Source: Paraphysomonas bandaiensis (taxonomy: Eukaryota; Protista; Chrysophyceae). Taken from it: DNA of 64,000 nucleotides. The notes beneath the pieces are model-generated. The model was not told the origin of the DNA, made no database searches, and saw only the letters and a program-made list of their open reading frames with translations. This document shows positions 9,726 through 64,000 of the stretch, in pieces. Positions within the stretch are counted from its first letter, which is position 1; the number at the start of each line of letters is the position of its first letter. The stretch spans positions 124,001-188,000 of the forward strand of contig CBFFRP010000146.1 in assembly GCA_965644295.1 (NCBI GenBank), read 5' to 3'. Position numbers and translations under genes: made by a program.

Positions 9726-10067
9726 CACACCGCGTCCTCACCACACACTCATGACGCGTGTTCGACGCTCTTGTGGGGCGTTTTTGGTCAAATTCAAATT
9801 TTTTTTGTACGTGTTTTTCTATATGTTATGCTGCGCCGTGCTCGATCTGGGCGCACATGCATGTCTAGATGTGTCCGGTGCGAGGAACATATTTTGAAAT
9901 GCATGCACTTCATCTCCATGTGCAGTTAGTTTCTATCACATCAACACCATATCAATAGTAGCATGTGATGTGATGTGATGTGATGTCATCTGGGACACAC
10001 AAAAAGGTACGACGACACGAACCTGTCTGCCATGAATGTCTGTTATGCTTGATTACATGTACGTACG

Positions 10068-11104
10068 TATATATAATGGTTGCGGAAGGAAACCTGTGAC
10101 TTCAACTCGCCTCAATAGCGGTGGCGACTGCTATTGGGACAGTGTCGTCATGAAAAGATGTGACCTTCCCAACCTTCATATGTTATACTTGTTTGTTCGG
10201 TCACCTGTGATATCCACTCGTGTCAGTAGCGGTGGCGACTGCTATTGGCGCAGGGTTGTCATGAAAAGATGTCGACAGAACTTACTTGTATGTTATACTG
10301 TATATATAATGGTTGCGGAAGGAAACCTGTGACTTCAACTCGCCTCAATAGCGGTGGCGACTGCTATTGGGACAGTGTCGTCATGAAAAGATGTGACCTT
10401 CCCAACCTTCATATGTTATACTTGTTTGTTCGGTCACCTGTGATATCCACTCGTGTCAGTAGCGGTGGCGACTGCTATTGGCGCAGGGTTGTCATGAAAA
10501 GATGTCGACAGAACTTACTTGTATGTTATACTGTATATATAATGGTTGCGGAAGGAAACCTGTGACTTCAACTCGCCTCAATAGCGGTGGCGACTGCTAT
10601 TGGGACAGTGTCGTCATGAAAAGATGTGACCTTCCCAACCTTCATATGTTATACTTGTTTGTTCGGTCACCTGTGATATCCACTCGTGTCAGTAGCGGTG
10701 GCGACTGCTATTGGCGCAGGGTTGTCATGAAAAGATGTCGACAGAACTTACTTGTATGTTATACTGTATATATAATGGTTGCGGAAGGAAACCTGTGACT
10801 TCAACTCGCCTCAATAGCGGTGGCGACTGCTATTGGGACAGTGTCGTCATGAAAAGATGTGACCTTCCCAACCTTCATATGTTATACTTGTTTGTTCGGT
10901 CACCTGTGATATCCACTCGTGTCAGTAGCGGTGGCGACTGCTATTGGCGCAGGGTTGTCATGAAAAGATGTCGACAGAACTTACTTGTATGTTATACTGT
11001 ATATATAATGGTTGCGGAAGGAAACCTGTGACTTCAACTCGCCTCAATAGCGGTGGCGACTGCTATTGGGACAGTGTCGTCATGAAAAGATGTGACCTTC
11101 CCAA
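10068..11104 (+). repeat. 233-bp tandem array (~4.4 copies) of two alternating related hairpin sub-units (5 A, 4 B)
   Basis: Units start at 10078, 10311, 10544, 10777 and 11010. Both sub-units share TAGCGGTGGCGACTGCTATTGG and GTCATGAAAAGATGT. Confidence 0.95.
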
Positions 11105-11289
11105 TCTGCACGTGTTGCATCCGTGTATTCTGTGCCCATGGTCTTTTGCTTGCAGTAAAATACATATCTATTATAAATATACATTAACTATTGAAATATA
11201 TTGTACAGATATATTTACTATTAGCATGAAAGAACCAGTGCCATGTTGAAGACCTTTATGTCCGCCTGCTGCATGCATTATGTGGTAAG

Positions 11290-14200
11290 AGTGAGATGGT
11301 ATAGTGTATATAGTTAGATGGTATAGGGATGTATAGTGAGATAGTATAGTGGCATATATTGAGATGGTATAGTGGTATATATTGATATGGTATAGTGGTA
11401 TATAGTGATATGGTATAGTGGTATATTGTGAGATGGTATAGTGGTATATTGTGATATGGTATAGTGGTATATTGTGAGATGGTATAGTGGTATATTGTGA
11501 GATGGTATAGTGGTATATAGTGATATGGTATAGTGTTATATAGTGAGATGGTATAGTGGTATATAGTGGGATGGTATCTGCGTGTATTGTGAGATGGTAC
11601 AATGGTTGTATAGTGAGATGGTATAGTGTATATAGTTAGATGGTATATGGGTGAATCGTAATATGGTATAGTGGCATATGGTGAGATGGTATAGTGATAT
11701 GGTATAGTAGTGGTATATAGTGAGATGGTATAGTGGTATATAGTGAGATGGTATAGTGGTGAATAGTAATATGGTGTAGGGATGTATAGTGAGATGGTAT
11801 ATTAGCATAGTTAGATGGCATAGTGATATATAGTTAGATGGTATAGTGCTATAATATAGTGAGATGGTATAGTGATGTATAGTGAGATAGTATAGTGACA
11901 TATGGTGAGATGGTATAGTGGTATATAGTGAGATGGTATAGTGGTATATAGTGGGATGGTATCTGGGTATATAGTGAGATGGTACAGTGGTTGTATAGTG
12001 AGATGGTATAGTGGTATATTGTGAGATGGTATAGTGGTATATTGTGAGATGGTATAGTGGTATATAGTGATATGGTATAGTGTTATATAGTGAGATGGTA
12101 TAGTGGTATATAGTGAGATGGTACAGTGGTTGTATAGTGCGATGGTACAGTGGTTGTATAGTGAGATGGTATAGTGTATATAGTTAGATGGTATATGGGT
12201 GAATCGTAATATGGTATAGTGGCATATGGTGAGATGGTATAGTGATATGGTATAGTAGTGGTATATAGTGAGATGGTATAGTGGTATATAGTGGGATGGT
12301 ATAGTGGTGAATAGTAATATGGTGTAGGGATGTATAGTGAGATGGTATATTAGCATAGTTAGATGGCATAGTGATATAATATAGTGAGATGGTATAGTGA
12401 TGTATAGTGAGATAGTATAGTGACATATGGTGAGATGGTATAGTGGTATATAGTGAGATGGTATAGTGGTATATAGTGGGATGGTATCTGGGTGTATAGT
12501 GAGATGGTACAGTGGTTGTATAGTGAGATGGTATCTGGATGTATAGTGAGATGGTATAGTGACATATGGTGAGATGGTATCGTGGTATATAGTGAGATGG
12601 TATAGTGGGATGGTATCTGGGTGTGTAGTGATATGGTACAGTGGTTGTATAGTGAGATGGTGTAGTGGTATATAGTGAGATGGTATATTAGCATAGTTAG
12701 ATGGCATAGTGATATATAGTTAGATGGTATAGTGGTATAATATAGTGAGATAGTATAGTGGCATATGGTGAGATGGTATAGTGATATATAGTGATATGGT
12801 ATAGTAGTGGTATATAGTGAGATGGTATAGTGGTATATAGTGAGATGGTATAGTGGTATATAGTGGGATGGTATAGTGGTGAATAGTAATATGGTATCTG
12901 GATGTATAGTGAGATGGTATATTAGCATAGTTAGATGGCATAGTGATATATAGTTAGATGGTGCAGTGGTTGTATAGTGAGATGGTATAGTGGTATATAG
13001 TGAGATAGTATAGTGGTATATAGTGAGATGGTATAGTGATGTATAGTGAGATGGTATAGTGGTATAATATAGTGATGTATAGTGAGGTAGTATATGGGTG
13101 TATAGTGAAATATAAAAGAATATCTGATTATTACATGAGAACGGTTGCGTACAGAAACTAGTTTTACATCTATAGAATAACTAATAACTCGACTTACTAT
13201 ATACTACTATTAGCGGGCTACCGTCTCGGGACTGCTTGTGCATCGCTGCGAGCACCATGGTTCAACCGTCCCTTGCAGTGAGGTTAATCGGGGGTCTGCC
13301 TTTGGGCAGTGTGTCTGCCGGGCCTGTATCGTGAGTTTTACGGGGGATGGTTGGGGCTAGATGTATATGAGAGTGTAAGTCGGTGGTGTAGATGGTGCTC
13401 GTTGTCGAGGTGGGATTTCGACCACAAGTAAGGAGGAGTTGTTTCCGGAGTGGTGGTGCTTGTCTCTGTCGGGTTCGGACTCTTGCAGCGGATAGAATTC
13501 TTGGGGTGGATGTCGCTAGGAGTAGTTGGAGTATTTTTGGTGTCGGGTGAGTATCCTGCGACGGGCGTTGCTGTGAGTGTGGTGGGGTCGTAATCGGTGT
13601 TACTGATGCCGTGTCTGTGTTGTGATGTCTGAGACCTCTGTTTCGAAGCATGCGGAGCCCTCCACCATATAGGGGAAGGAGGATAGAGGTTACGGATTTT
13701 TCGAGAACGTGGAACTGATGTTCGAGCAGTGAGCTGGATATGTGGCGTCCGAATGCGTCGGTCAATTGTGTGGCAGTAATGTGGCCGGTCCAGTAGCGCT
13801 CAGCCTGGGGTGTGTGTGGATTCCATGCGGCTTTTGCTAGTTTGATTATGGCGGTGTGGAACCAGGGATGGGGGAGCGTGCGTGTGCGAAGTTTGTCGAA
13901 CTTGTGGTGTGCTTGGTGAACATCTTCACGTATGTGAGTGAGGTCGGGGTGTGTGCAGGTGAGAAGCATGTGTGCCATGTTGTCGATTGGGAGTGCACAG
14001 TCTGCGCATGCTGAGGCCGTTGTTATGTGATCAGGCCCGGTTTTCCCTTTGGCTTGATTTCTGCCCATCGCGTATGATTTGTCCCATACGTAGGTGTATA
14101 GTGAAATGGTATATGGGTGTATAGTGAGATAGTGTAGTGATGTATAGTTAGGTGGTATAGTGGTATACAGTAGATGGTATAGTGGTATAATATAGTGGGA

Positions 14201-14639: not shown

Positions 14640-15464
14640 CCTTTTCCGACCATCACCAAAAATTTCACCAGGTTTTACATCAAAACCCAGGTTTTGGTAT
14701 TACCTCGACTTTTCCTAATCCAGTTTCCTGTATGCGACAGTGACTTTTCTCCTGTCTACCACTCCTGTGGTAATATAGGACAGATGTACATCAAGATGTC
14801 TGAGGCCCACCAGGTACTGATAATCAATTTTACTCTCTGGTGTTTTCGCGTAAATACTGCCTTATATGATGTCCTACTAAAATTCACCTGCGCCATCTGC
14901 ATGATATCGTCATAGTACCAATCTTTCTTCTCCACACTTTTCATGCATTTCAACACTTCACTCCCGCCTTTTGTTTTTCAAACCATATGCCCATACTTCC
15001 TTTGCATCGCTGTCTTTGAAAAGTAACACATGTTTGTATCCTTCCATAGATGGCGTGTTTGGTATATGCACTGAGCACCCCTCTCTCATTTCAAAGTTGT
15101 CATTTGGGTTGTTGTCTAAAAGTTCATCATTATATAAATCTTGTTGCACCCACTGTCTAGGTATATAACTTCTGACGTGCTCTGTGCCATATTCACCTCT
15201 TCTTCAACACATACCATCGATTCATATCCCGCTTCATCTTCTGAGTCATGTACTGATACTCGCGGTTTCTTCTTATTTTTGTAGTTAACAATTGCCAATT
15301 ATTTACAGTTACTGTATCTACAAAAATAAGAATAAACCGCGAGTATCAGTACATGACTCAGAAGATGAAGCGGGATATGAATCGATGGTATGTGTTGAAG
15401 AAGAGGTGAATATGGCACAGAGCATGGCGGAAGATATATACCTAGACAGTGGGTGCAACAAGAT
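14640..15464 (-). mobile_element. Ty1/copia-like remnant (protease and integrase fragments) ending in a 147-bp-arm fold-back
   Basis: IYLDSGCNK aspartic protease motif; GYKHVLLFKDSDAKEVWAYGLKNK integrase-core motif. 15138-15284 is inverted at 15318-15464. Confidence 0.75.
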
Positions 15465-15594: not shown

Positions 15595-18318
15595 CTACAC
15601 AGCAGTACTTCCCGCCGCCTCGTCAGAGAAGCAATACCCAGTAGATTCGTCATAAATCAGTTCGAATCCATCAGGAATATTGTTAGCAACATTATCTGAC
15701 GATGGGGTATTCACTTCACAACCTGCTCCAGATCGTGCCTTTTTCCCTATTGAATGTGCAGCGAGAACAAGATCCAGAGTGCCATCAACAACAGTTTGGA
15801 TTAACTCGTTCTTTCCAACACAAAGAGCTGGGTTTGTGTTAGCCTCAAGCAGAATAGCTTTGTTATTGGGAGCACTGGTAACCATAAAATCGAGTCCTAA
15901 TAGATCAAAGTAACCCTTTTTCTTAATAAAGAGACCATTAGACGCCTACAACACAACCGATAAGTACACGAATATTAAAACCAGTTTAAATATCTGACTG
16001 ACCTTTATAATATCAACCATGCATTTCTTCATTTCCGAATTGATCTTATTTCTTAAGAAAGCTGCACTTTCTACGTCTCCCGCACGCTCGACCGCATCCA
16101 CGAGTTCTTCACGAGTAAGAATCTAGCATAGAGACTATTACACAAGTGTAGATATGAAATAAAACAACCTGGCTATCCTTGTGTTCCTTGAAGTCTGAGG
16201 ACTTCTTCTGAATAGAAGTGTTGCTCAAGTGAACAACAGAATCTTCCAGAGAGGATAGGTCCAGAGTGTAAGGTTTCAAAGTTCTTCTAGCGTATCCAGG
16301 ATAGAAATATACAATTGTATGAGGCACAACTTGAGCAATTAGCATATACACCCGTAAGTCAAACTTATATCCATCTACCAGAAGCGGTCGCATAATGTAC
16401 TCTTGAACGATGCCTTTCGGTAGGGGTTGAGTATATGTTGCACCTTTCCTTGCAGGTGACTCAGACCCATTCCTACTTTTTTCCTCCGACTCTGCCGAAG
16501 TGGACGATTGAGTGAGATGGGGATGGTACTCTCGTATTAGTTCCATGATTTCTCGTCCTCCTTGCATTACTCGAACGCCTCTTCCACGGTTACTGCATGA
16601 GGGCTTGTAAATCCACAAAACGGATGCATCTCCTTCCCTAGTAGTACCAACTGCTGCCTCAGACAACCTCTTGTCCGCATCCAACAAGGCCAGACAGTCA
16701 GTAATATCATCCAGCTGGTATGTCTCTGGCATCCACGGAGTTGGCAGGCGGGAAGATGCAATCTGTTCAATATTAGAAGCGGTATTCTTGGGAATATCCT
16801 GAGTTGCATTTCCCGTCAGAGCAGTTGCAAGGACTTCCACGGGACTTTCTGTGTCAAGCAGAGCAGAATATCCGGTCATTTGGGTACGAGAGGACTGGGA
16901 ACAGGAGGCATAATGATCCCGCAGGCACGTCAGTAGCCCGATTTTCGTCGTAATCACGTCATTATTCGGAATATGGTTAACCAACTGTCATATACTATAA
17001 AAAACACAGACATACTCTGAGCAAATACCTGTCCAGAATGGTGAGCTTTGAAGTCGATTTGTGACCGTCTTTCCACCCACTTCAATGCAAATCTTGTGGA
17101 GAAAGCGTACTCGAACGGAAGCTGCTGCCAACCACGTCTATCGAGAGAATTCTTTATAAAACGCCAGCCGTTTCCTTCTCCAACGTAGTAAGTGAATGGT
17201 GGTGGGGGCTTTTGTGTGACAGATGGTGCAGTGACTGAGCCGCGGGATGCACTTTCAGCGGTGTCTGCAGGATTGCTGCGTGACCTCGGGAGGCGCTTGG
17301 CTGTGCGTGTTCGTCGGCCTCCTTTAGCACTGGTTTCAGCAACTGGAATAGAATTAATTTGCTTTGCTTCGATATCATCTTGATCTTCAGTACGAATAGT
17401 TTCCTCCTTCTCATGCTCCATCTCCTCATCTTCTACATCGCTACATCCACCGGCAGATTCATCATCTGACGAGTCATGGAATATGGATCGACTCCCAGCT
17501 GCCATCGCGAGAGCTGCATTAGATGATATCCACTGATGCTCTGGACAGACACTCACACACTGGCCGTTCAGCCAGGTGTCAATGCTACAAAAGTATACTT
17601 TCTCCAGGTTCCATAACTTAGACGGAAAAAGATATGATGGAAAGATCTGTACAGTACCCTTTTGGTATCGTGCACCAATCGTAGCTTCTCCAGTCTCACC
17701 CCCCAAAAATATTTCAACATGGACCATATCATGCTTTTGAACCTTAGATCTGATAAAAATTGCATAGTGATGACATAAATTCAAAAAAAGATAAGTACAA
17801 ACCTCTTTGAAGTGTATGTTCCGGCGTAGAAAATCAAATCACCAGGCTTCAATTCTTTTACACTCTCCACTCTAATCGGAAGGGTGTCAAACTGGTAAGC
17901 CTGTACGAAAGATTATAAGCACGTTTATTACATTACATATACAAACCTGATTCCATTTACCAATGACAAACCCGAAATCACTTTGTAAATCCTTCAACAC
18001 TTGTCTGACCAAGCCGCAGCAATCCAAGTACAGCGGGTGATCAGATGCACCTTCAGGTTGATACTTTTTGGCATAAGGAACACCCATATAAAACTTTGCC
18101 CTATCAATAAACTTTTGTCGTAACTGATCTTTGAATTCTTCAGATCGATCTGGTCGATGTTGTAGACACTGTTTCATCAGTTTTCTTTCTTGTTTCTTCT
18201 CTTTAAGAAACTTCGCAAACGAATCTTGAAGAGACGTCTTTTCATTTCCACCAATCACTACTATTTTATCACTAATAAGAACATTTTCTACATTCTCTTT
18301 CGCTGTAGTTTCATTCAT
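15595..18318 (-). CDS. TTLL10: TTLL10-like tubulin/protein glycylase fused to an N-terminal NlpC/P60-like cysteine peptidase domain (~6 exons)
   Basis: TTL motifs LVNHIPNNDVITTKIGLL, WIYKPSCSNRGRG, VQEYIMRPLLVDGYKFDLRVY, HLSN and GYFDLLGLDF...LLEANTNPAL. N-terminal motifs GVPY...LDCCGLV...PGDLIFY...HVEIFLG. The introns join all parts in one frame. Confidence 0.85.
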
Positions 18319-19066: not shown

Positions 19067-19981
19067 ATGATGTTTGGGAAACCGCATCTCAATCTCTCTT
19101 GTTCGACTCTCGGTATGGAAACACTTACACCTATTCCTCCTCCATTTCTAGTACCACGACCATTTGAAATCAAGAAACCTGTATGGTGTCAAGCACCAAC
19201 TACTAGTGTGATATTTGAAGAGTGTGGTACCGGACGTGAGAGAGATATTGGTGAAGAGGCATTTTATATCATTGGACGTAATGAAAGATGTGATATCATT
19301 CTTGGAGAAATTATGGTGTCCAGGTGTCATGCAGTTTTATGTCATAATGGTTTGGGTGATGTTTATCTCATTGACCTTGGGTCCAGCCACGGCACATTTA
19401 TTGGCAACCATCGGCTAGTTCCATACACCCCCACTTTAGTTAAGCGACATTCGGTTATGCGATTTGGCTCATGGGAAAAGCAGTATATTGTGCGCGAGTA
19501 CCCTAAGCCAGATGATGTTCTTGCCAAGTCTAAGTATTGTGAATCCGTTGAGGAGCAGTTAGCGATGCTAAATGCTTTCCGCAACATCACCTGCTTGACA
19601 CCGACAAATTCGCAGGATAGACCTATGAATGTTGACAAAAGTGAAGAGGTATTGCCTGTTACGGAAGTTGGACCATATCGTCCGGCCCGTCGGTGCTCTT
19701 ATGCGGATCTGGGAGACAGCAAGCGCGAGATGATTGACATATCTCAAGAAGACACTCTTCACACACAACTAGTTCATGCCCAGGAGGCCTTGCACGCCCG
19801 CAAGAGTATGCGTCGAAGTTTCTCGCTGGATAGCAGCTATGCAAGTCCGTGTGCGCGACGACTTTCCACAAATGGTGGGGAAGGCGGTGGGATGTGCCGC
19901 AAGAAGGTACGCTTTTCGGAGGGAGACCTCTCAGTGGTGTACACAGCAGAGACTGCCACAGGACGAGCACCCGGTAACTAA
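19067..19981 (+). CDS. FHA-domain protein
   Basis: IIGRNERCDI...VSRCHAVL...LIDLGSSHGTFI matches the FHA consensus. C-terminal KKVRF is an RVxF-type PP1-docking motif, as in NIPP1-like proteins. Confidence 0.85.
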   Translation: MMFGKPHLNLSCSTLGMETLTPIPPPFLVPRPFEIKKPVWCQAPTTSVIFEECGTGRERDIGEEAFYIIGRNERCDIILGEIMVSRCHAVLCHNGLGDVYLIDLGSSHGTFIGNHRLVPYTPTLVKRHSVMRFGSWEKQYIVREYPKPDDVLAKSKYCESVEEQLAMLNAFRNITCLTPTNSQDRPMNVDKSEEVLPVTEVGPYRPARRCSYADLGDSKREMIDISQEDTLHTQLVHAQEALHARKSMRRSFSLDSSYASPCARRLSTNGGEGGGMCRKKVRFSEGDLSVVYTAETATGRAPGN

Positions 19982-57192: not shown

Positions 57193-58461
57193 ATGAAGCC
57201 CCTCTCGTCATCCATATCGTTGCTCATCGTCTCGTTCTTCTTACAATGGCTTCAGCTGTGGGCTTCTTGTTCTGAGGATTTGTCAAATGTATACTATATA
57301 CCTGTGTATGATATGGGTTCATCTGCACCAACAATGTACGTCAACAGTTTTGGCTGTCAATGTGACGGATGGGGTGGTGATGTTGTTTCCCAGAGCTGGA
57401 GAATTGACTTTAGACATAGAAACTGCACATGTTCAATAACTTATGATTCAAAGTCTTTTGATCTAGTACATATTGACGTGTTAATGAATACTATGAATCA
57501 TATATCTGGCAATTATCATGACCTCGAAGTAAAATTATATCATGAAGATAGAATGGCAAATGTTCTGGAAGTCATTGTTCCACTGGTTATCGATGTCAGC
57601 ATTTACGATAGCGAAGACTGGTTGAAATATGTAGCATTGCTCGGCACCAATAACTTCACCAACGTACGTACCTTTCATCCTTACGACGACATGGTTCCTG
57701 ACTACACAGACTATGCGACGTTTCTTGTCTCGTCCCCCATTTGTAACACCACAATACGTCGAATCGTGATGCTGGATAATGTTCTTGTCGGATTGCAATT
57801 CTATGTATCTATCCGGCATATAGTGTACAACTCAACACTAGCAGGCTCCATAATTCCTTCAAATAGTAACGATATCATTAATCTAAATGCTTCAGAGGTG
57901 AGTCTCTATCGTTACATTTCTCAGCAGGATGAAATTTTGAAGCCGAAGCCAAGGCCAAATGCTGGTCCTAACAGCGTGAGTAACGACACAATGATTTTGG
58001 TCGGTGGTATTACGGCTGCGCTTGCTGTTTTATCTGCTGCAATTCTCTTTGTAAAATGGAAGAATCGCCAGTATAAAACGATTGATACTTCAGTTAATGT
58101 TGCGTACGCATTTCCCAGTCTGGATGCTACATCCCACTGTAAAATTAATACAGGAATTCCCAAAGAACAGGAAGATGTTGAGTTGGTACTTCAAGATATT
58201 GTTTCATACGATATCAATGAACAAAATAACGACATGGACCGGTTTACACCTTTTCTTGACAAGTCAATAACAGCTTCGGACAGCTGTATTCCCCCATATT
58301 TCACTCTGGCAGCTCAGTATTGCGAAAGTGAAGATTACACTTATGAAACATGTGAGCATTGCGAAGATAAATTGGTAACAGATGAAGATAGTAGCGACGA
58401 AGAGTTTAACGAGATTAGCTTTTTCACTCCACAAAAGCATTCGTATGATAACTTCTTGTGA
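57193..58461 (+). CDS. Hypothetical type I membrane protein (signal peptide, Cys-containing ectodomain, one TM helix, acidic tail)
   Basis: 422-aa ORF; hydrophobic N-terminus; TM helix ILVGGITAALAVLSAAILFV followed by KWKNR; several N-x-S/T sequons. Confidence 0.75.
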   Translation: MKPLSSSISLLIVSFFLQWLQLWASCSEDLSNVYYIPVYDMGSSAPTMYVNSFGCQCDGWGGDVVSQSWRIDFRHRNCTCSITYDSKSFDLVHIDVLMNTMNHISGNYHDLEVKLYHEDRMANVLEVIVPLVIDVSIYDSEDWLKYVALLGTNNFTNVRTFHPYDDMVPDYTDYATFLVSSPICNTTIRRIVMLDNVLVGLQFYVSIRHIVYNSTLAGSIIPSNSNDIINLNASEVSLYRYISQQDEILKPKPRPNAGPNSVSNDTMILVGGITAALAVLSAAILFVKWKNRQYKTIDTSVNVAYAFPSLDATSHCKINTGIPKEQEDVELVLQDIVSYDINEQNNDMDRFTPFLDKSITASDSCIPPYFTLAAQYCESEDYTYETCEHCEDKLVTDEDSSDEEFNEISFFTPQKHSYDNFL

Positions 58462-59312
58462 TATTTTGTATCACTACGAGCAATGCCATGTTTCTGTAAG
58501 GTTGTTTAGTATCAGTACTTCTCAGTACTTTTCACATGGAAAGCATTCAATACTATGAAGTTAGTGCATTAGGAAATCACAACGCAAATATTTAATCATT
58601 TGAACTCAGCTGAAGATATTATGTAGATCACGAAAATAATATTATGGTTACAGTGTTTGTTGTAAGATTTCCATCTATCATTGCATATCTTTTAAATACT
58701 ATAATTTGCTGTAATAGTGTTAAATCATAATATTACTACTGCCAATATATTTGAAGTAAGAACTAGATATTTCGAGTGGTCTCGAGAACTATACTTCAAT
58801 AAGATAGCACCTCCTATGTACATACAACATACAAATGTAAATACCAACGGAACTATCAGGGAAAGAAAATTCCATGTATAAAAAAATATGCTCAGTGCGA
58901 GATTCTTTTACGCTCTATTGCGATGGAAATAACTGTACTTTATATAGTCGCTTATTTTGACTTCACCACCGGAGAAATGGTGTAGCCAAGCAAGCATGTT
59001 GTCCTTTGTAGCCGCCCAAGCGTATAATGCAAAATAAACTCGTAGCAGGTAGTGATTTATCTTCAGCCTAACCTCCACAGGAGACCCTAATTGGGTGCAC
59101 CGCTGTTGAGAAGATAACATCGATATGAAGAGCCACATGAATATCTGCATAGTACTTGAATAGCATAATACTAGGGTGTCTTTTCCTCACTCAAAAAGCC
59201 CATGAAATTATCTCCTAGGTAAAACAATCGCTAGGAACTCCTACTAGTCAATTTCAAGCTTAAATTCTGTCTATAATCATACACATTCTTAGAGATCTAG
59301 AACACAGAGCGA

Positions 59313-62300
59313 TCCATATCCATATCCACCATATCCACCATATCCACACACATATCCACACACATATCTACCATATCCACACACATATCCACACACATAT
59401 CCACCATATCCACACACATATCCACACACATATCCACCATATCCACCATATCCACACACATATCCACCATATCCACACACATATCCACACACATATCCAC
59501 CATATCCACACACATATCCACACACATATCCACCATATCCACACACATATCCACACACATATCCACCATATCCACCATATCCACACACATATCCACCATA
59601 TCCACACACATATCCACACACATATCCACCATATCCACCATATCCACACACATATCCACCATATCCACACACATATCCACACACATATCCACCATATCCA
59701 CCATATCCACACACATATCCACCATATCCACACACATATCCACACACATATCCACCATATCCACCATATCCACACACATATCCACCATATCCACCATATC
59801 CACACACATATCCACCATATCCACACACATATCCACACACATATCCACCATATCCACACACATATCCACCATATCCACACACATATCCACACACATATCC
59901 ACCATATCCACACACATATCCACACACATATCCACCATATCCACCATATCCACACACATATCCACACAGTACACCATATCCACCATATCCACACACATAT
60001 CCACCATATCCACACACATATCCACACACATATCCACCATATCCACACACATATCCACACACATATCCACCATATCCACCATATCCACACACATATCCAC
60101 CATATCCACACACATATCCACCATATCCACCATATCCACACACATATCCACACACATATCCACCATATCCACCATATCCACACACATATCCACCATATCC
60201 ACACACATATCCACACACATATCCACACACATATCCACACACATATCCACCATATCCACCATATCCACACACATATCCACCATATCCACACACATATCCA
60301 CCATATCCACCATATCCACACACATATCCACACACATATCCACCATATCCACCATATCCACACACATATCCACCATATCCACACACATATCCACACACAT
60401 ATCCACCATATCCACCATATCCACACACATATCCACCATATCCACACACATATCCACACACATATCCACCATATCCACCATATCCACACACATATCCACC
60501 ATATCCACACACATATCCACACACATATCCACCATATCCACCATATCCACACACATATCCACCATATCCACACACATATCCACACACATATCCACCATAT
60601 CCACCATATCCACACACATATCCACCATATCCACACACATATCCACACACATATCCACCATATCCACACACATATCCACACACATATCCACCATATCCAC
60701 CATATCCACACACATATCCACCATATCCACACACATATCCACACACATATCCACCATATCCACCATATCCACACACATATCCACCATATCCACACACATA
60801 TCCACCATATCCACACACATATCCACCATATCCACCATATCCACACACATATCCACCATATCCACACACATATCCACACACATATCCACCATATCCACCA
60901 TATCCACACACATATCCACCATATCCACACACATATCCACACACATATCCACCATATCCACCATATCCACACACATATCCACCATATCCACACACATATC
61001 CACACACATATCCACCATATCCACCATATCCACACACATATCCACCATATCCACACACATATCCACACACATATCCACCATATCCACACACATATCCACA
61101 CACATATCCACCATATCCACCATATCCACACACATATCCACCATATCCACACACATATCCACACACATATCCACCATATCCACCATATCCACACACATAT
61201 CCACCATATCCACACACATATCCACCATATCCACACACATATCCACACACATATCCACCATATCCACCATATCCACACACATATCCACCATATCCACACA
61301 CATATCCACACACATATCCACACACATATCTACCATATCCACACACATATCCACACACATATCCACCATATCCACACACATATCCACACACATATCCACC
61401 ATATCCACCATATCCACACACATATCCACCATATCCACACACATATCCACACACATATCCACCATATCCACCATATCCACACACATATCCACCATATCCA
61501 CACACATATCCACACACATATCCACCATATCCACCATATCCACACACATATCCACCATATCCACACACATATCCACACAGTAGTGAATGTCTGATTATTT
61601 AGCAATAGGCGTTGAGACCTTGCATCAATTAGTGGCTAGAAGAATGCTAGTCATACTAGTTAGACCACTACCCGTAACTAATCAATACAAACTCTTTTAT
61701 CCTACTATTTAACGCTACGAAAGCTGCTTGTGCGTCGCCGCAAGCACCAAGGTGCAACCACTTCCGTTCACATATCCACACACATATCCACCATATCCAC
61801 CATATCCACACACATATCCACCATATCCACACACATATCCACACACATATCCACCATATCCACACACATATCCACACACATATCCACACAGTACACCATA
61901 TCCACACACATATCCACACACATATCCACCATATCCACACACATATCCACACACATATCCACCATATCCACACACATATCCACACACATATCCACCATAT
62001 CCACACACATATCCACACACATATCCACCATATCCACCATATCCACACACATATCCACCATATCCACACACATATCCACACACATATCCACCATATCCAC
62101 CATATCCACACACATATCCACCATATCCACACACATATCCACACACATATCCACCATATCCACACACATATCCACACACATATCCACCATATCCACCATA
62201 TCCACACACATATCCACCATATCCACACACATATCCACACAGTACACCATATCCACCATATCCACACACATATCCACCATATCCACACACATATCCACAC

Positions 62301-63982
62301 ACATATCCACCATATCCACACACATATCCACACACATATCCACCATATCCACACACATATCCACACACATATCCACCATATCCACACACATATCCACCAT
62401 ATCCACCATATCCACACACATATCCACACACATATCCACCATATCCACCATATCCACACACATATCCACCATATCCACACACATATCCACACACATATCC
62501 ACCATATCCACCATATCCACACACATATCCACCATATCCACACACATATCCACACACATATCCACCATATCCACCATATCCACACACATATCCACCATAT
62601 CCACACACATATCCACACACATATCCACCATATCCACCATATCCACACACATATCCACCATATCCACACACATATCCACACACATATCCACCATATCCAC
62701 CATATCCACACACATATCCACCATATCCACACACATATCCACACACATATCCACCATATCCACACACATATCCACACACATATCCACCATATCCACCATA
62801 TCCACACACATATCCACCATATCCACACACATATCCACACACATATCCACCATATCCACCATATCCACACACATATCCACCATATCCACACACATATCCA
62901 CACACATATCCACCATATCCACACACATATCCACACAGTACACCATATCCACCATATCCACACACATATCCACCATATCCACACACATATCCACACACAT
63001 ATTCACCATATCCACCATATCCACACACATATCCACCATATCCACACACATATCCACACACATATCCACCATATCCACCATATCCACACACATATCCACC
63101 ATATCCACACACATATCCACACACATATCCACCATATCCACACACATATCCACACAGTACACCATATCCACCATATCCACACACATATCCACCATATCCA
63201 CACACATATCCACACACATATCCACCATATCCACACACATATCCACACACATATCCACCATATCCACCATATCCACACACATATCCACACAGTACACCAT
63301 ATCCACCATATCCACACACATATCCACCATATCCACACACATATCCACACACATATCCACCATATCCACACACATATCCACACACATATCCACCATATCC
63401 ACCATATCCACACACATATCCACCATATCCACACACATATCCACCATATCCACCATATCCACACACATATCCACACACATATCCACCATATCCACCATAT
63501 CCACACACATATCCACCATATCCACACACATATCCACACACATATCCACCATATCCACACACATATCCACACACATATCCACCATATCCACACACATATC
63601 CACCATATCCACACACATATCCACCATATCCACACACATATCCACACACATATCCACCATATCCACACACATATCCACACACATATCCACCATATCCACC
63701 ATATCCACACACATATCCACCATATCCACCATATCCACACACATATCCACCATATCCACACACATATCCACACACATATCCACCATATCCACACACATAT
63801 CCACACACATATCCACCATATCCACCATATCCACACACATATCCACCATATCCACACACATATCCACACAGTACACCATATCCACCATATCCACACACAT
63901 ATCCACACACATATCCACCATATCCACACACATATCCACACACATATCCACCATATCCACACACATATCCACACAGTACACC
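59313..63982. repeat. Two-monomer satellite of 12-mer CATATCCACACA and 9-mer CATATCCAC, with higher-order patterns
   Basis: About 4.7 kb made almost entirely of these two units, with rare variants (CCACACAGTACAC, CTACCAT). Confidence 0.97.
61580..61769 (-). mobile_element. ~190-bp 3'-terminal fragment of the same LINE family, inside the satellite
   Basis: Aligns with 25645-25825. GCTGCTTGTGCGTCGCCGCAAGCACCAAGGTGCAACCACTTCCGTTC is identical and TATTTAGCAATAGGCGTT is shared. Confidence 0.9.
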
Positions 63983-64000
63983 AGCATACCGTCGAATACT

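What the first reader, a model, noticed from the sequence alone, without database searches (positions are those of the whole stretch)
15595..18318. NlpC/P60 cysteine peptidase fused to a TTLL10-like glycylase: a possible writer-eraser enzyme of the tubulin code
Seen: GT-AG introns join an N-terminal domain to a complete TTL ligase domain in one frame, through an acidic linker. The N-terminal domain has NlpC/P60 hallmarks (FYMGVPY...LDCCGLV...PGDLIFY...HVEIFLG, with Cys and His retained). The ligase motifs (TTKIGLL, GYFDLLGLDF, LLEANTNPAL) fit TTLL10. Known: TTLLs build side chains on the gamma-carboxyl of Glu, and many NlpC/P60 enzymes hydrolyse gamma-glutamyl amide bonds. Inference: the fused peptidase may trim or remove glycyl/glutamyl branches, or proofread the ligase. 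The fusion may already exist unannotated in databases; I know of no functional study.
Basis: partly seen in the sequence, partly recalled or inferred. Interest (0 to 1): 0.8.

Follow-up and report, generated by a model that had tools for sequence, protein, structure and literature searches.

The report
Polyglycylase TTLL10 carrying a cysteine amidase
This is a real, expressed gene of a marine flagellate for the tubulin polyglycine ligase TTLL10. In most eukaryotes outside the usual model animals, TTLL10 carries an intact NlpC/P60 cysteine amidase domain that the papers I could search do not mention, which makes that domain a testable candidate for the still-unknown enzyme that removes tubulin glycylation.

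Summary
Observation confirmed. Window 18318-15595 (minus strand) is one 6-exon gene with five GT-AG introns of 44-57 nt, encoding 825 aa. Two RNA-derived contigs span it with every intron removed. An MMETSP Paraphysomonas ORF (P0324) is 822/825 identical to the model. The two domains and the linker lie in a single exon.

The C-terminal half is a TTL ligase. In a tree it groups (99/99) with NCBI-named vertebrate TTLL10, apart from seven paralogues in the same genome.

The N-terminal domain has a canonical NlpC/P60 fold (VIA-align Z 12-13). Its Cys100, His167 and Glu169 are unchanged wherever present in 94 aligned relatives (93-94 sequences). It is more conserved than the ligase domain.

The fusion is not special to this genome. 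It is the usual TTLL10 form in stramenopiles, ciliates, choanoflagellates, sponges, cnidarians, echinoderms, molluscs and many non-mammalian vertebrates. UniProt auto-labels a few of these "NlpC/P60 domain-containing". No paper in the held library links NlpC to TTL or TTLL enzymes. A 2025 TTLL10 study states that no glycine-removing enzyme is known.

The eraser or editing function remains inference. A solved precedent exists: trypanothione synthetase-amidase pairs an N-terminal papain-like amidase with a C-terminal ATP-grasp ligase.

The parts
15595..18318 (-). Whole coding region of the TTLL10 orthologue. Six exons: 18318-17947, 17900-17803, 17749-17029, 16984-16169, 16122-16003, 15945-15595 (stop included). 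825 aa.
   Evidence: In-frame join and GT-AG introns. Spliced contigs X1 and X4 remove exactly these introns. P0324 is 822/825 identical.
17470..18141 (-). NlpC/P60-type papain-fold amidase domain, residues about 60-250, interrupted by introns 1 and 2. It includes a conserved C-terminal extension (residues 213-250, W216, C221, H228, W230).
   Evidence: A family profile hits solved NlpC/P60 enzymes at 5.6e-6. The AlphaFold model of the homologue P0041:74-282 has pLDDT 90. The top 50 Foldseek hits are all NlpC/P60. VIA-align gives Z 12-13 and rmsd 2.4-3.2 over 113-127 residues.
18019..18021 (-). Codon of Cys100, the predicted nucleophile: the first Cys of the D-C-C-G motif, which aligns with D-C-S-G of bacterial enzymes.
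   Evidence: HMM alignment to 3npf and 3pvq. Cys in 93 of 93 aligned relatives that cover the column.
17713..17721 (-). Codons His167-Val168-Glu169. His167 is the predicted general base. Glu169 is a family-specific invariant at a position where bacterial enzymes have Gly.
   Evidence: Aligned with H-V-G of 3npf. His and Glu in 94 of 94 sequences.
17206..17469 (-). Disordered linker, residues 251-338: an acidic stretch followed by a basic Arg/Lys/Ser-rich stretch. It lies entirely inside exon 3.
   Evidence: Translation. pLDDT below 50 for residues 252-330 in the full-length model. 19% mean identity among relatives.
15733..17205 (-). TTL (ATP-grasp) ligase domain, residues about 339-780, interrupted by introns 3, 4 and 5.
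   Evidence: Pfam TTL 1.3e-28 on exon 4 and 3.6e-36 on P0324. Foldseek matches TTLL6, TTL, TTLL3 and TTLL11 at E about 1e-18 to 1e-15. Groups with TTLL10 at 99/99 support.

Best explanation
The gene encodes the TTLL10 orthologue of a Paraphysomonas-like chrysophyte flagellate. TTLL10 is the ATP-grasp ligase that lengthens polyglycine side chains on glutamates of tubulin C-terminal tails. Here it is in its ancestral two-enzyme form. An N-terminal canonical (non-permuted) NlpC/P60 papain-fold domain with an intact Cys100-His167 pair is tethered to the ligase by an 80-residue disordered acidic/basic linker.

Shown: one spliced transcript; both folds; invariance of the catalytic Cys and His across about 90 relatives from stramenopiles to vertebrates; single origin and vertical inheritance of the fusion.

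Inferred: the N-domain is an active amidase working on the same substrate as the ligase. It would hydrolyse glycyl side-chain bonds on tubulin tails, either Gly-Gly bonds within the chain or the gamma-glutamyl-glycine branch point. That would trim, edit or reset the modification under regulation, as the amidase does in trypanothione/glutathionylspermidine synthetase-amidases.

I put the structural part at 0.95 or higher and the specific deglycylase/editing function at about 0.35. The overall figure given is a blend of the two.
For: One gene, one transcript:
-.
- The domain junction lies within a single exon.

N-domain is NlpC/P60:
- The profile of 61 relatives hits gamma-D-glutamyl-L-diamino-acid endopeptidase-type structures 3npf and 3pvq at 5.6e-6 and 2.5e-5, with DCCG aligned to DCSG and HVE to HVG.
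- The model has pLDDT 90. Foldseek's top 50 are all NlpC/P60. VIA-align Z is 12-13 and covers whole bacterial catalytic domains.

Conservation points to an active enzyme:
- C100, C101, D99, N123 and Q124 are unchanged in 93 of 93 sequences. H167, E169 and R184 are unchanged in 94 of 94.
- The NlpC core is 59% identical on average to the window's protein, against 40% for the TTL domain.
- 19% of N-domain positions are at least 95% conserved, against 8% in the TTL domain.

TTLL10 identity and single origin:
- All fusion proteins form one clade (99/99) with NCBI-named Latimeria, Ambystoma and Crocodylus TTLL10. Seven paralogues of the same genome fall outside it. The inner topology follows the species tree.

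Chemistry (established knowledge): NlpC/P60 enzymes typically cut gamma-glutamyl amide bonds, and related CHAP enzymes cut bonds to glycine. The glycylation branch is a gamma-glutamyl-glycine isopeptide.

Precedent: Leishmania trypanothione synthetase-amidase has an N-terminal papain-like Cys-His amidase and a C-terminal ATP-grasp ligase that catalyse opposing reactions (PMC2427367).

Open niche:
- 'Unidentified deglycylases' (PMC11244163).
Against: - No activity data exist for this domain.
- The canonical third catalytic residue (His, Glu or Asp about 12 residues after the His) aligns with a variable position. It is Ala179 here and A/K/E/Q/G/S in relatives. The centre is therefore at best a Cys-His dyad, or it uses the family-specific Glu169. 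I could not inspect coordinates.
- The window's protein itself scores below Pfam's NLPC_P60 cut-off (17.2-20.0 against 23 bits).
- Species with the fused form (sea urchin P0259, Tetrahymena P0415) are reported to carry long polyglycine chains (PMC11244163). The amidase therefore cannot be a constitutive eraser.
- The ligase works without the domain. A Xenopus tropicalis TTLL10 fragment (residues 105-570) is an active elongase. No mammal or bird appeared among 156 N-domain hits.
- Cummings et al. propose chain-length control without any deglycylase.
Confidence: 0.45

Rival explanations
1. The amidase acts on glutamyl rather than glycyl side chains. As a gamma-glutamyl isopeptidase it would remove glutamate branches that compete with glycylation on the same tail, clearing or remodelling the tail that the polyglycylase is recruited to.
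For: The closest solved relatives by sequence profile are gamma-D-glutamyl-L-diamino-acid endopeptidase-type enzymes (3npf, 3pvq; also 2evr). TTLL10 is recruited and stimulated by glutamylated tails (title and abstract of 10.1101/2024.03.31.587457). This reading is compatible with long glycine chains persisting in species that have the domain.
Against: Dedicated deglutamylases (CCP and TMCP metallocarboxypeptidases) already exist. TTLL10 only elongates existing glycines, so freeing glutamates does not directly feed it. No experimental data.
Confidence: 0.12
2. The domain is an active cysteine hydrolase or transferase, but its target is not the tubulin side chain. It might cleave its own linker or C-terminus to regulate or release the ligase. 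It might act on other glycylated proteins such as NAP1. It might process a small gamma-glutamyl or glycyl compound.
For: Invariant Cys and His show catalysis but say nothing about substrate. A conserved S-I-F and acidic motif directly follows the domain, and a conserved C-terminal F-x-L-L-x-x-E block is modelled as an ordered strand. This recalls the C-terminus that occupies the amidase site in trypanothione synthetase-amidase. TTLL10 glycylates NAP1. A metagenomic relative, P0358, joins the same N-domain to a U-box instead of a TTL domain, so the domain can work with another partner.
Against: Almost every full-length relative recovered pairs the domain with a TTLL10-type ligase. In the TTL tree this holds from stramenopiles to vertebrates. 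That pattern is most simply explained by a shared substrate.
Confidence: 0.2
3. The domain is a non-catalytic module that binds tubulin tails, glycyl branches or a partner protein, as some NlpC/P60 domains (for example RipD) have become.
For: The canonical third catalytic residue is missing. The non-catalytic RipD is among the structural matches. The ligase core alone already recognises monoglycylated substrate.
Against: Cys100, His167 and the surrounding motifs are unchanged in 93-94 sequences covering well over a billion years of divergence. Binding modules usually lose these residues. Cys-His dyads are active in some relatives such as Tse1 (my own knowledge; Tse1 is a structural match).
Confidence: 0.08
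4. Artefact: two neighbouring genes, or a mis-assembly, read as one.
For: None found.
Against: The junction lies inside one exon. Spliced contigs from independent runs span the whole gene. An independent MMETSP ORF is 822/825 identical. More than 120 full-length relatives are collinear with it.
Confidence: 0.01

Closest known systems
TTLL10, the tubulin/NAP1 polyglycylase (elongase) characterised in mouse and Xenopus tropicalis
   Same: The TTL domain falls in one 99/99-supported clade with NCBI-named vertebrate TTLL10. It aligns collinearly at about 40% identity over about 650-750 residues with shark, turtle, caecilian and invertebrate family members. ATP-grasp motifs are conserved.
   Different: The forms studied biochemically lack, or were made without, the N-terminal domain: the Xenopus construct covers residues 105-570, and no mammal was among the N-domain hits. 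The window's protein and most non-mammalian orthologues carry a roughly 190-residue NlpC/P60 domain that the TTLL10 papers I read do not mention (one search found no 'N-terminal domain', 'peptidase', 'papain' or 'P60' in the 2025 TTLL10 study).
Bacterial NlpC/P60 (MEROPS C40) cell-wall endopeptidases, for example dipeptidyl-peptidase VI/YkfC-type (3npf, 3pvq), SagA (6b8c), RipA/RipB, MepS
   Same: Same non-permuted papain-like fold (Z 12-13). Same D-C-x-G nucleophile motif and H-V-x-I base motif. Shared G-x-P-Y and Q motifs.
   Different: Cytosolic eukaryotic protein with no peptidoglycan substrate. The third triad residue is not at the canonical place. It has family-specific invariants (second Cys101, Glu169, Arg184) and a conserved Cys/His/Trp-rich C-terminal extension. 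It scores below the Pfam cut-off.
Trypanothione synthetase-amidase and glutathionylspermidine synthetase/amidase
   Same: Same architecture and logic: an N-terminal papain-like Cys-His amidase joined to a C-terminal ATP-grasp C:N ligase, catalysing opposite reactions under conformational control (PMC2427367).
   Different: Not homologous as a unit. These enzymes are absent from the top 50 structural matches of the N-domain, and the ligase is of the TTL type. The substrate there is a small thiol-polyamine conjugate, not a protein tail. The resemblance is an analogy that supports plausibility, not membership.
Known erasers of the tubulin code: CCP/TMCP deglutamylases (M14 metallocarboxypeptidases) and vasohibin-SVBP detyrosinase (transglutaminase-like cysteine peptidase)
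   Same: It would be a peptidase acting on tubulin C-terminal tails. Vasohibin shows that papain-clan cysteine peptidases can do this (PMC10318531).
   Different: Different fold family from both. It would be the only eraser physically fused to its writer. No activity has been shown.

Membership tests
TTL/TTLL ATP-grasp ligases (Pfam PF03133) | Match to the TTL profile above the curated cut-off | tested here: met
   Exon 4 scores 100.5 bits and P0324 scores 125.3 bits, against a cut-off of 20.1.
TTL/TTLL ATP-grasp ligases (Pfam PF03133) | ATP-grasp fold like solved TTL/TTLL enzymes | tested here: met
   The full-length model (pLDDT 80) matches TTLL6, TTL, TTLL3 and TTLL11 at Foldseek E 3e-18 to 1e-15.
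TTL/TTLL ATP-grasp ligases (Pfam PF03133) | Conserved nucleotide- and Mg-binding residues | tested here: met
   K524, Q591, Y593, K604, D606, R608, D728, E743, N745 and N747 are at least 95% conserved in 94 relatives and present in the window. Their assignment to ATP or Mg binding is from general knowledge of TTLLs.
TTLL10 subfamily (polyglycine elongase) | Groups with named TTLL10 and not with other TTLL paralogues | tested here: met
   Clade of 13 fusion proteins including Latimeria, Ambystoma and Crocodylus TTLL10, support 99/99. Seven paralogues of the same genome are excluded. No named TTLL3/8 or glutamylase references were in the tree.
TTLL10 subfamily (polyglycine elongase) | Adds glycines only to already monoglycylated substrate | not testable with these tools
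   Needs an enzyme assay.
NlpC/P60 superfamily (Pfam PF00877, MEROPS C40) | Match to the NLPC_P60 profile above the curated cut-off (23 bits) | tested here: inconclusive
   The window's protein scores 17.2 bits (whole) and 20.0 bits (residues 40-260), both below the cut-off. Relatives P0024 (26.6) and P0313 (24.9) pass. The family profile hits solved NlpC/P60 enzymes at 5.6e-6.
NlpC/P60 superfamily (Pfam PF00877, MEROPS C40) | Papain-like alpha+beta fold in the non-permuted order (Cys helix before His strand) | tested here: met
   Model of the homologue P0041:74-282 (63% identical to P0324, the near-identical copy of the window's protein, over residues 40-260). Z is 12-13 over whole bacterial domains. 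All top 50 Foldseek hits are NlpC/P60. The window's own N-domain has the same secondary-structure order at pLDDT 86-98.
NlpC/P60 superfamily (Pfam PF00877, MEROPS C40) | Catalytic Cys and His | tested here: met
   Cys100 aligns with the Cys of DCSG and His167 with the His of HVG. Both are invariant. Their spatial juxtaposition could not be measured because no coordinates are returned.
NlpC/P60 superfamily (Pfam PF00877, MEROPS C40) | Third polar triad residue about 12 residues after the His | tested here: not met
   That column is Ala179 here and variable in relatives (A 35, K 23, E 9, Q 9, G 6, S 6). Dyad enzymes exist in the superfamily, so this lowers but does not remove the case for activity.
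Bifunctional amidase/ATP-grasp synthetases (GspSA, TryS) | Homology of the amidase and ligase to those enzymes | tested here: not met
   They are not among the top 50 structural matches of the N-domain, and the ligase is of the TTL type. Only the architecture is shared.

The most novel reading that the evidence does not exclude
The N-terminal NlpC/P60 domain of TTLL10 is the long-sought tubulin deglycylase, or a glycine-chain editing enzyme. On this reading it is an ancestral eukaryotic writer-eraser fusion that was overlooked because mammals, and the truncated constructs used in vitro, lack it.
Probability: 0.3. Interest if true: 0.9.

Novelty: new variant of a known kind. Interest (0 to 1): 0.7.

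Why it matters
Glycylation is the one major tubulin-tail modification for which no removing enzyme is known. Two recent papers say so explicitly. Here a predicted active cysteine amidase of the chemical class that cuts gamma-glutamyl and glycyl amide bonds sits on the same polypeptide as the polyglycylase. It is more conserved than the ligase domain. It is present in tractable systems: a Tetrahymena species, sea urchin, Nematostella and choanoflagellates. That turns the open question into a direct experiment.

If the domain is not a deglycylase, it is still an unexplained, strongly constrained catalytic domain of a well-studied enzyme family. Its apparent loss in mammals would bear on how chain length is controlled there.

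The window's gene itself is an ordinary orthologue. The interest lies in the family-wide feature it exposes.

Tried and rejected
- Exon-by-exon Pfam and NCBIfam scans did not detect the peptidase domain, which is split over three exons. phmmer of exon 1 against PDB sequences gave only chance hits. The domain became visible only through relatives, a family profile and a fold model.
- A reciprocal tblastn of vertebrate TTLL10 ligase domains against the genome was confounded by introns and gave small margins. I replaced it with a maximum-likelihood tree.
- PDB sequence and fold matches of the ligase do not separate glycylase from glutamylase types. TTLL3 is best by sequence and TTLL6 by fold.
- I could not read Anantharaman & Aravind 2003 (Genome Biol 4:R11) or Iyer et al. 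2009 (Mol Biosyst) because they are not held. I have an unverified recollection that NlpC/P60 domain architectures were surveyed there, so an earlier passing mention of the fusion cannot be excluded.
- One paper search was too broad to be useful.
- Two-gene or mis-assembly readings are rejected.
- Pseudoenzyme is judged unlikely because the Cys and His are invariant.
- The tools return no coordinates, so I could not measure the Cys-His distance, look for a substitute third residue, or see how the two domains pack. The full-length pTM of 0.72 hints at a defined arrangement but is not proof.
Full report
**Observation.** The region was read on both strands and its ORFs listed. On the minus strand an ATG at 18318 opens a frame that continues through five short GT..AG introns to a TAG ending at 15595. 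The introns are 17946-17901, 17802-17750, 17028-16985, 16168-16123 and 16002-15946, with lengths 46, 53, 44, 46 and 57 nt. Joined locally in a script, the six exons give 2478 nt with no internal stop, encoding 825 residues. All quoted motifs are there. The two halves of the protein are not brought together by splicing. Exon 3 (17749-17029) by itself runs from the His motif of the peptidase domain, through the acidic then basic linker, into the first 60 residues of the ligase domain.

**How the spliced model was handled.** The joined protein was never sent to a search, fold or look-up tool. It was only translated and compared locally in scripts. Whole-protein analyses were done on P0324, a database protein that a search returned and that is 822/825 identical to the model.

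**Transcript evidence.**
- Runs holding the stretch are marine.
- Contigs of X1 (2740 nt) and X4 (2581 nt) lie on 15500/15598-18400 as six blocks. They skip exactly 57, 46, 44, 53 and 46 nt with CT..AC ends on the plus strand. These are all five modelled introns and nothing else.
- A contig from a poly(A) metatranscriptome (X5) crosses the 16984/17029 junction, and X8 crosses two others.
- These are assembled contigs, so they show neither transcript ends nor expression level. Intron-free sequence across the whole gene is nevertheless RNA-derived, and it carries one uninterrupted 825-codon frame.
- Independently, P0324 is a 'complete' ORF of 825 aa that differs at S92P, K502M and V617M. It comes from MMETSP1103, taxon 36769, which is Paraphysomonas, a colourless chrysophyte flagellate. 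The amino-acid differences are consistent with the single-base differences seen in X1 and X4 (I did not map them codon by codon).

**The genome.** It is 62.5 Mb and holds a single copy of this N-domain. It has about a dozen TTL-family loci, as expected for a flagellate.

**The ligase half.**
- Pfam TTL matches exon 4 at 1.3e-28 and P0324 at 3.6e-36.
- The full-length AlphaFold model (pLDDT 80, pTM 0.72) matches TTLL6, TTL, TTLL3 and TTLL11 structures. Residues 252-330 of that model are disordered.
- A maximum-likelihood tree of TTL domains alone puts the window's protein in a 99/99-supported clade. The clade also holds Ectocarpus, two ciliates, a choanoflagellate, an ichthyosporean, a sponge, Nematostella, sea urchin, lamprey and the NCBI-named TTLL10 of coelacanth, axolotl and crocodile.
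- Seven other TTLL loci of the same genome fall outside that clade. Inside it, stramenopiles, ciliates and opisthokonts separate as in the species tree.
- The gene is therefore the TTLL10 orthologue. The fusion arose once, early, and was inherited vertically.

**The N-terminal half.**
- Exon 1 alone finds 40 relatives, two of which carry Pfam NLPC_P60.
- An exhaustive search with exon 3 finds 389 clusters. Many are proteins of 600-1100 aa matched in two stretches, meaning both the peptidase end and the ligase start. Ten of these, scanned with Pfam, all have a TTL domain and most have a sub-threshold NLPC_P60 match.
- A profile of 61 N-domains hits solved NlpC/P60 enzymes. The best are dipeptidyl-peptidase VI-type entries 3npf and 3pvq at 5.6e-6 and 2.5e-5. 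D-C-C-G aligns with D-C-S-G, and H-V-E-I-F-L-G with H-V-G-I-Y-L-G.
- The model of the closest full-length homologue's domain (P0041:74-282, pLDDT 90) gives only NlpC/P60 structures among Foldseek's top 50. VIA-align Z is 12-13 at rmsd 2.4-3.2 Å, covering entire bacterial catalytic domains, for example 113 of 117 residues of SagA.
- The topology is the canonical one, with Cys before His. It is not the permuted LRAT type.
- The window's own domain, modelled within P0324, shows the same order of helices and strands at pLDDT 86-98.
- Pfam's own threshold is narrowly missed by this protein (17-20 against 23 bits). That probably explains why most database entries list only the TTL domain.

**Conservation** (94 full-length relatives; counts).
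- Cys100, Cys101, Asp99, Asn123 and Gln124 are unchanged in all 93 sequences that cover them. His167, Glu169 and Arg184 are unchanged in all 94.
- The NlpC core is on average 59% identical to the window's protein. The ligase domain is 40% identical and the linker 19%.
- 19% of N-domain positions are at least 95% conserved, against 8% in the ligase domain.
- The one canonical feature that fails is the third triad residue. The column that holds His in 3npf is Ala179 here and is variable. The site is therefore a dyad, or uses the family-specific Glu169 two residues after the His. This could not be checked without coordinates.

**Distribution** (names from the sources).
- Protists and algae with the fused form: chrysophytes (Paraphysomonas, Spumella, 'ChrysophyteH1'), the brown alga Ectocarpus, ciliates (Protocruzia, Tetrahymena malaccensis, plus an ESM Atlas cluster of 114 mostly ciliate members), the choanoflagellate Salpingoeca kvevrii and the ichthyosporean Chromosphaera. 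The choanoflagellate Choanoeca flexa is represented only by N-domain fragments (135 and 241 aa), so the fusion was not confirmed there.
- Invertebrates: sponges, cnidarians, echinoderms (including Strongylocentrotus purpuratus), a hemichordate, a brachiopod, molluscs, annelids and nemerteans.
- Vertebrates: lampreys, sharks, sturgeon/paddlefish, bichir, tarpon, coelacanth, caecilians, axolotl, turtles, crocodile, lizards and snakes. Many of these are named 'TTLL10' by NCBI.
- UniProt auto-names some of these proteins 'NlpC/P60 domain-containing protein'.
- No mammal, bird or frog appears among the 156 hits of the N-domain search, although their TTLL10 lengths fall inside the search's length window. 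This is suggestive of loss but is not proof. From memory, human and mouse TTLL10 have no such domain.

**Literature.**
- In the held library (8.1 million PMC papers and 0.36 million preprints) only three papers contain both 'NlpC' and 'TTL...'. None discusses the fusion.
- The 2025 TTLL10 reconstitution study used Xenopus tropicalis residues 105-570. [quoted passage not shown]
- A 2024 paper speaks of 'unidentified deglycylases'.
- Zhang & Aravind 2012 predicted that ciliary transglutaminase-like peptidases might remove tubulin modifications. That concerns a different domain.
- Two older surveys that might mention the architecture could not be read.

**Mechanism.**
- Shown: a predicted active papain-clan amidase is tethered to the polyglycine elongase by a flexible linker. 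This pairing has been kept since before stramenopiles, alveolates and opisthokonts diverged, with stronger constraint on the amidase than on the ligase.
- Inferred: the two domains share a substrate, and the amidase hydrolyses side-chain amide bonds on tubulin tails.
- Chemistry: both candidate bonds fit the superfamily, from general knowledge of its members. One is the gamma-glutamyl-glycine branch, like gamma-D-Glu-diamino acid. The other is a bond to or between glycines, like CHAP enzymes acting on pentaglycine bridges.
- Precedent: trypanothione synthetase-amidase and the related bacterial glutathionylspermidine synthetase (PMC2427367; the bacterial enzyme's own amidase domain is from my knowledge, not the part I read) pair an N-terminal papain-like amidase with a C-terminal ATP-grasp ligase. 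The amidase undoes the ligase's own product and is gated by a C-terminal segment.
- By that analogy the TTLL10 amidase would shorten or remove glycine chains under regulation rather than constitutively. This would reconcile it with the long chains reported in sea urchin sperm and Tetrahymena.
- I rate this at about 0.35. The rivals are a deglutamylase, another or an in-cis substrate, or a binding module. They are set out separately with the experiments that would separate them.

**Verdict.** The window's gene is an ordinary orthologue. The family-wide feature it exposes is real and is not described in the literature I could search. It bears directly on an acknowledged open question.

Noticed in passing
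window 15138-15464: Just downstream of the gene's stop codon lies a near-perfect palindrome: two 150-nt arms, 96% complementary, 27 nt apart. Each arm is a dispersed repeat with at least 39 other copies across the genome at 87-89% identity (89% to one arm, 87% to the other). It is probably part of a mobile element inserted head to head. The X1 transcript contig appears to run into it.
   Followed up: partly
protein P0358 (ENA metagenome, 694 aa; no locus fetched): A relative whose N-domain is 61% identical to the window's N-domain is followed by a U-box (Pfam 4.7e-12) instead of a TTL domain. Here the same amidase is paired with a different enzyme that forms isopeptide bonds.
   Followed up: partly
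L008 (G000:C280:10500-14500): In the TTL-domain tree this paralogue is the nearest neighbour of the TTLL10 clade (support 87/91). It may be the initiating TTLL3/8-type glycylase of this organism.
   Followed up: no
window 10001-14000 and 58001-64000: Blocks of extreme GC skew: +0.34 to +0.60 at 10-14 kb and -0.39 to -0.98 at 58-64 kb. This suggests strand-biased simple or satellite repeats.
   Followed up: no
window 19067-19981 (+): The divergent upstream neighbour is a 304-aa ORF whose middle looks by eye like an FHA domain (G-R...S-x-x-H ... G-S-x-x-G-T). It was not scanned.
   Followed up: no
L001 2217-5138 and L003 6001-10172: Metagenomic contigs from other protists carry the same gene. 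The NlpC/P60 ORF is followed on the same strand by TTL ORFs split by short introns. The linker in L003 is much longer and rich in Ala/Ser.
   Followed up: partly
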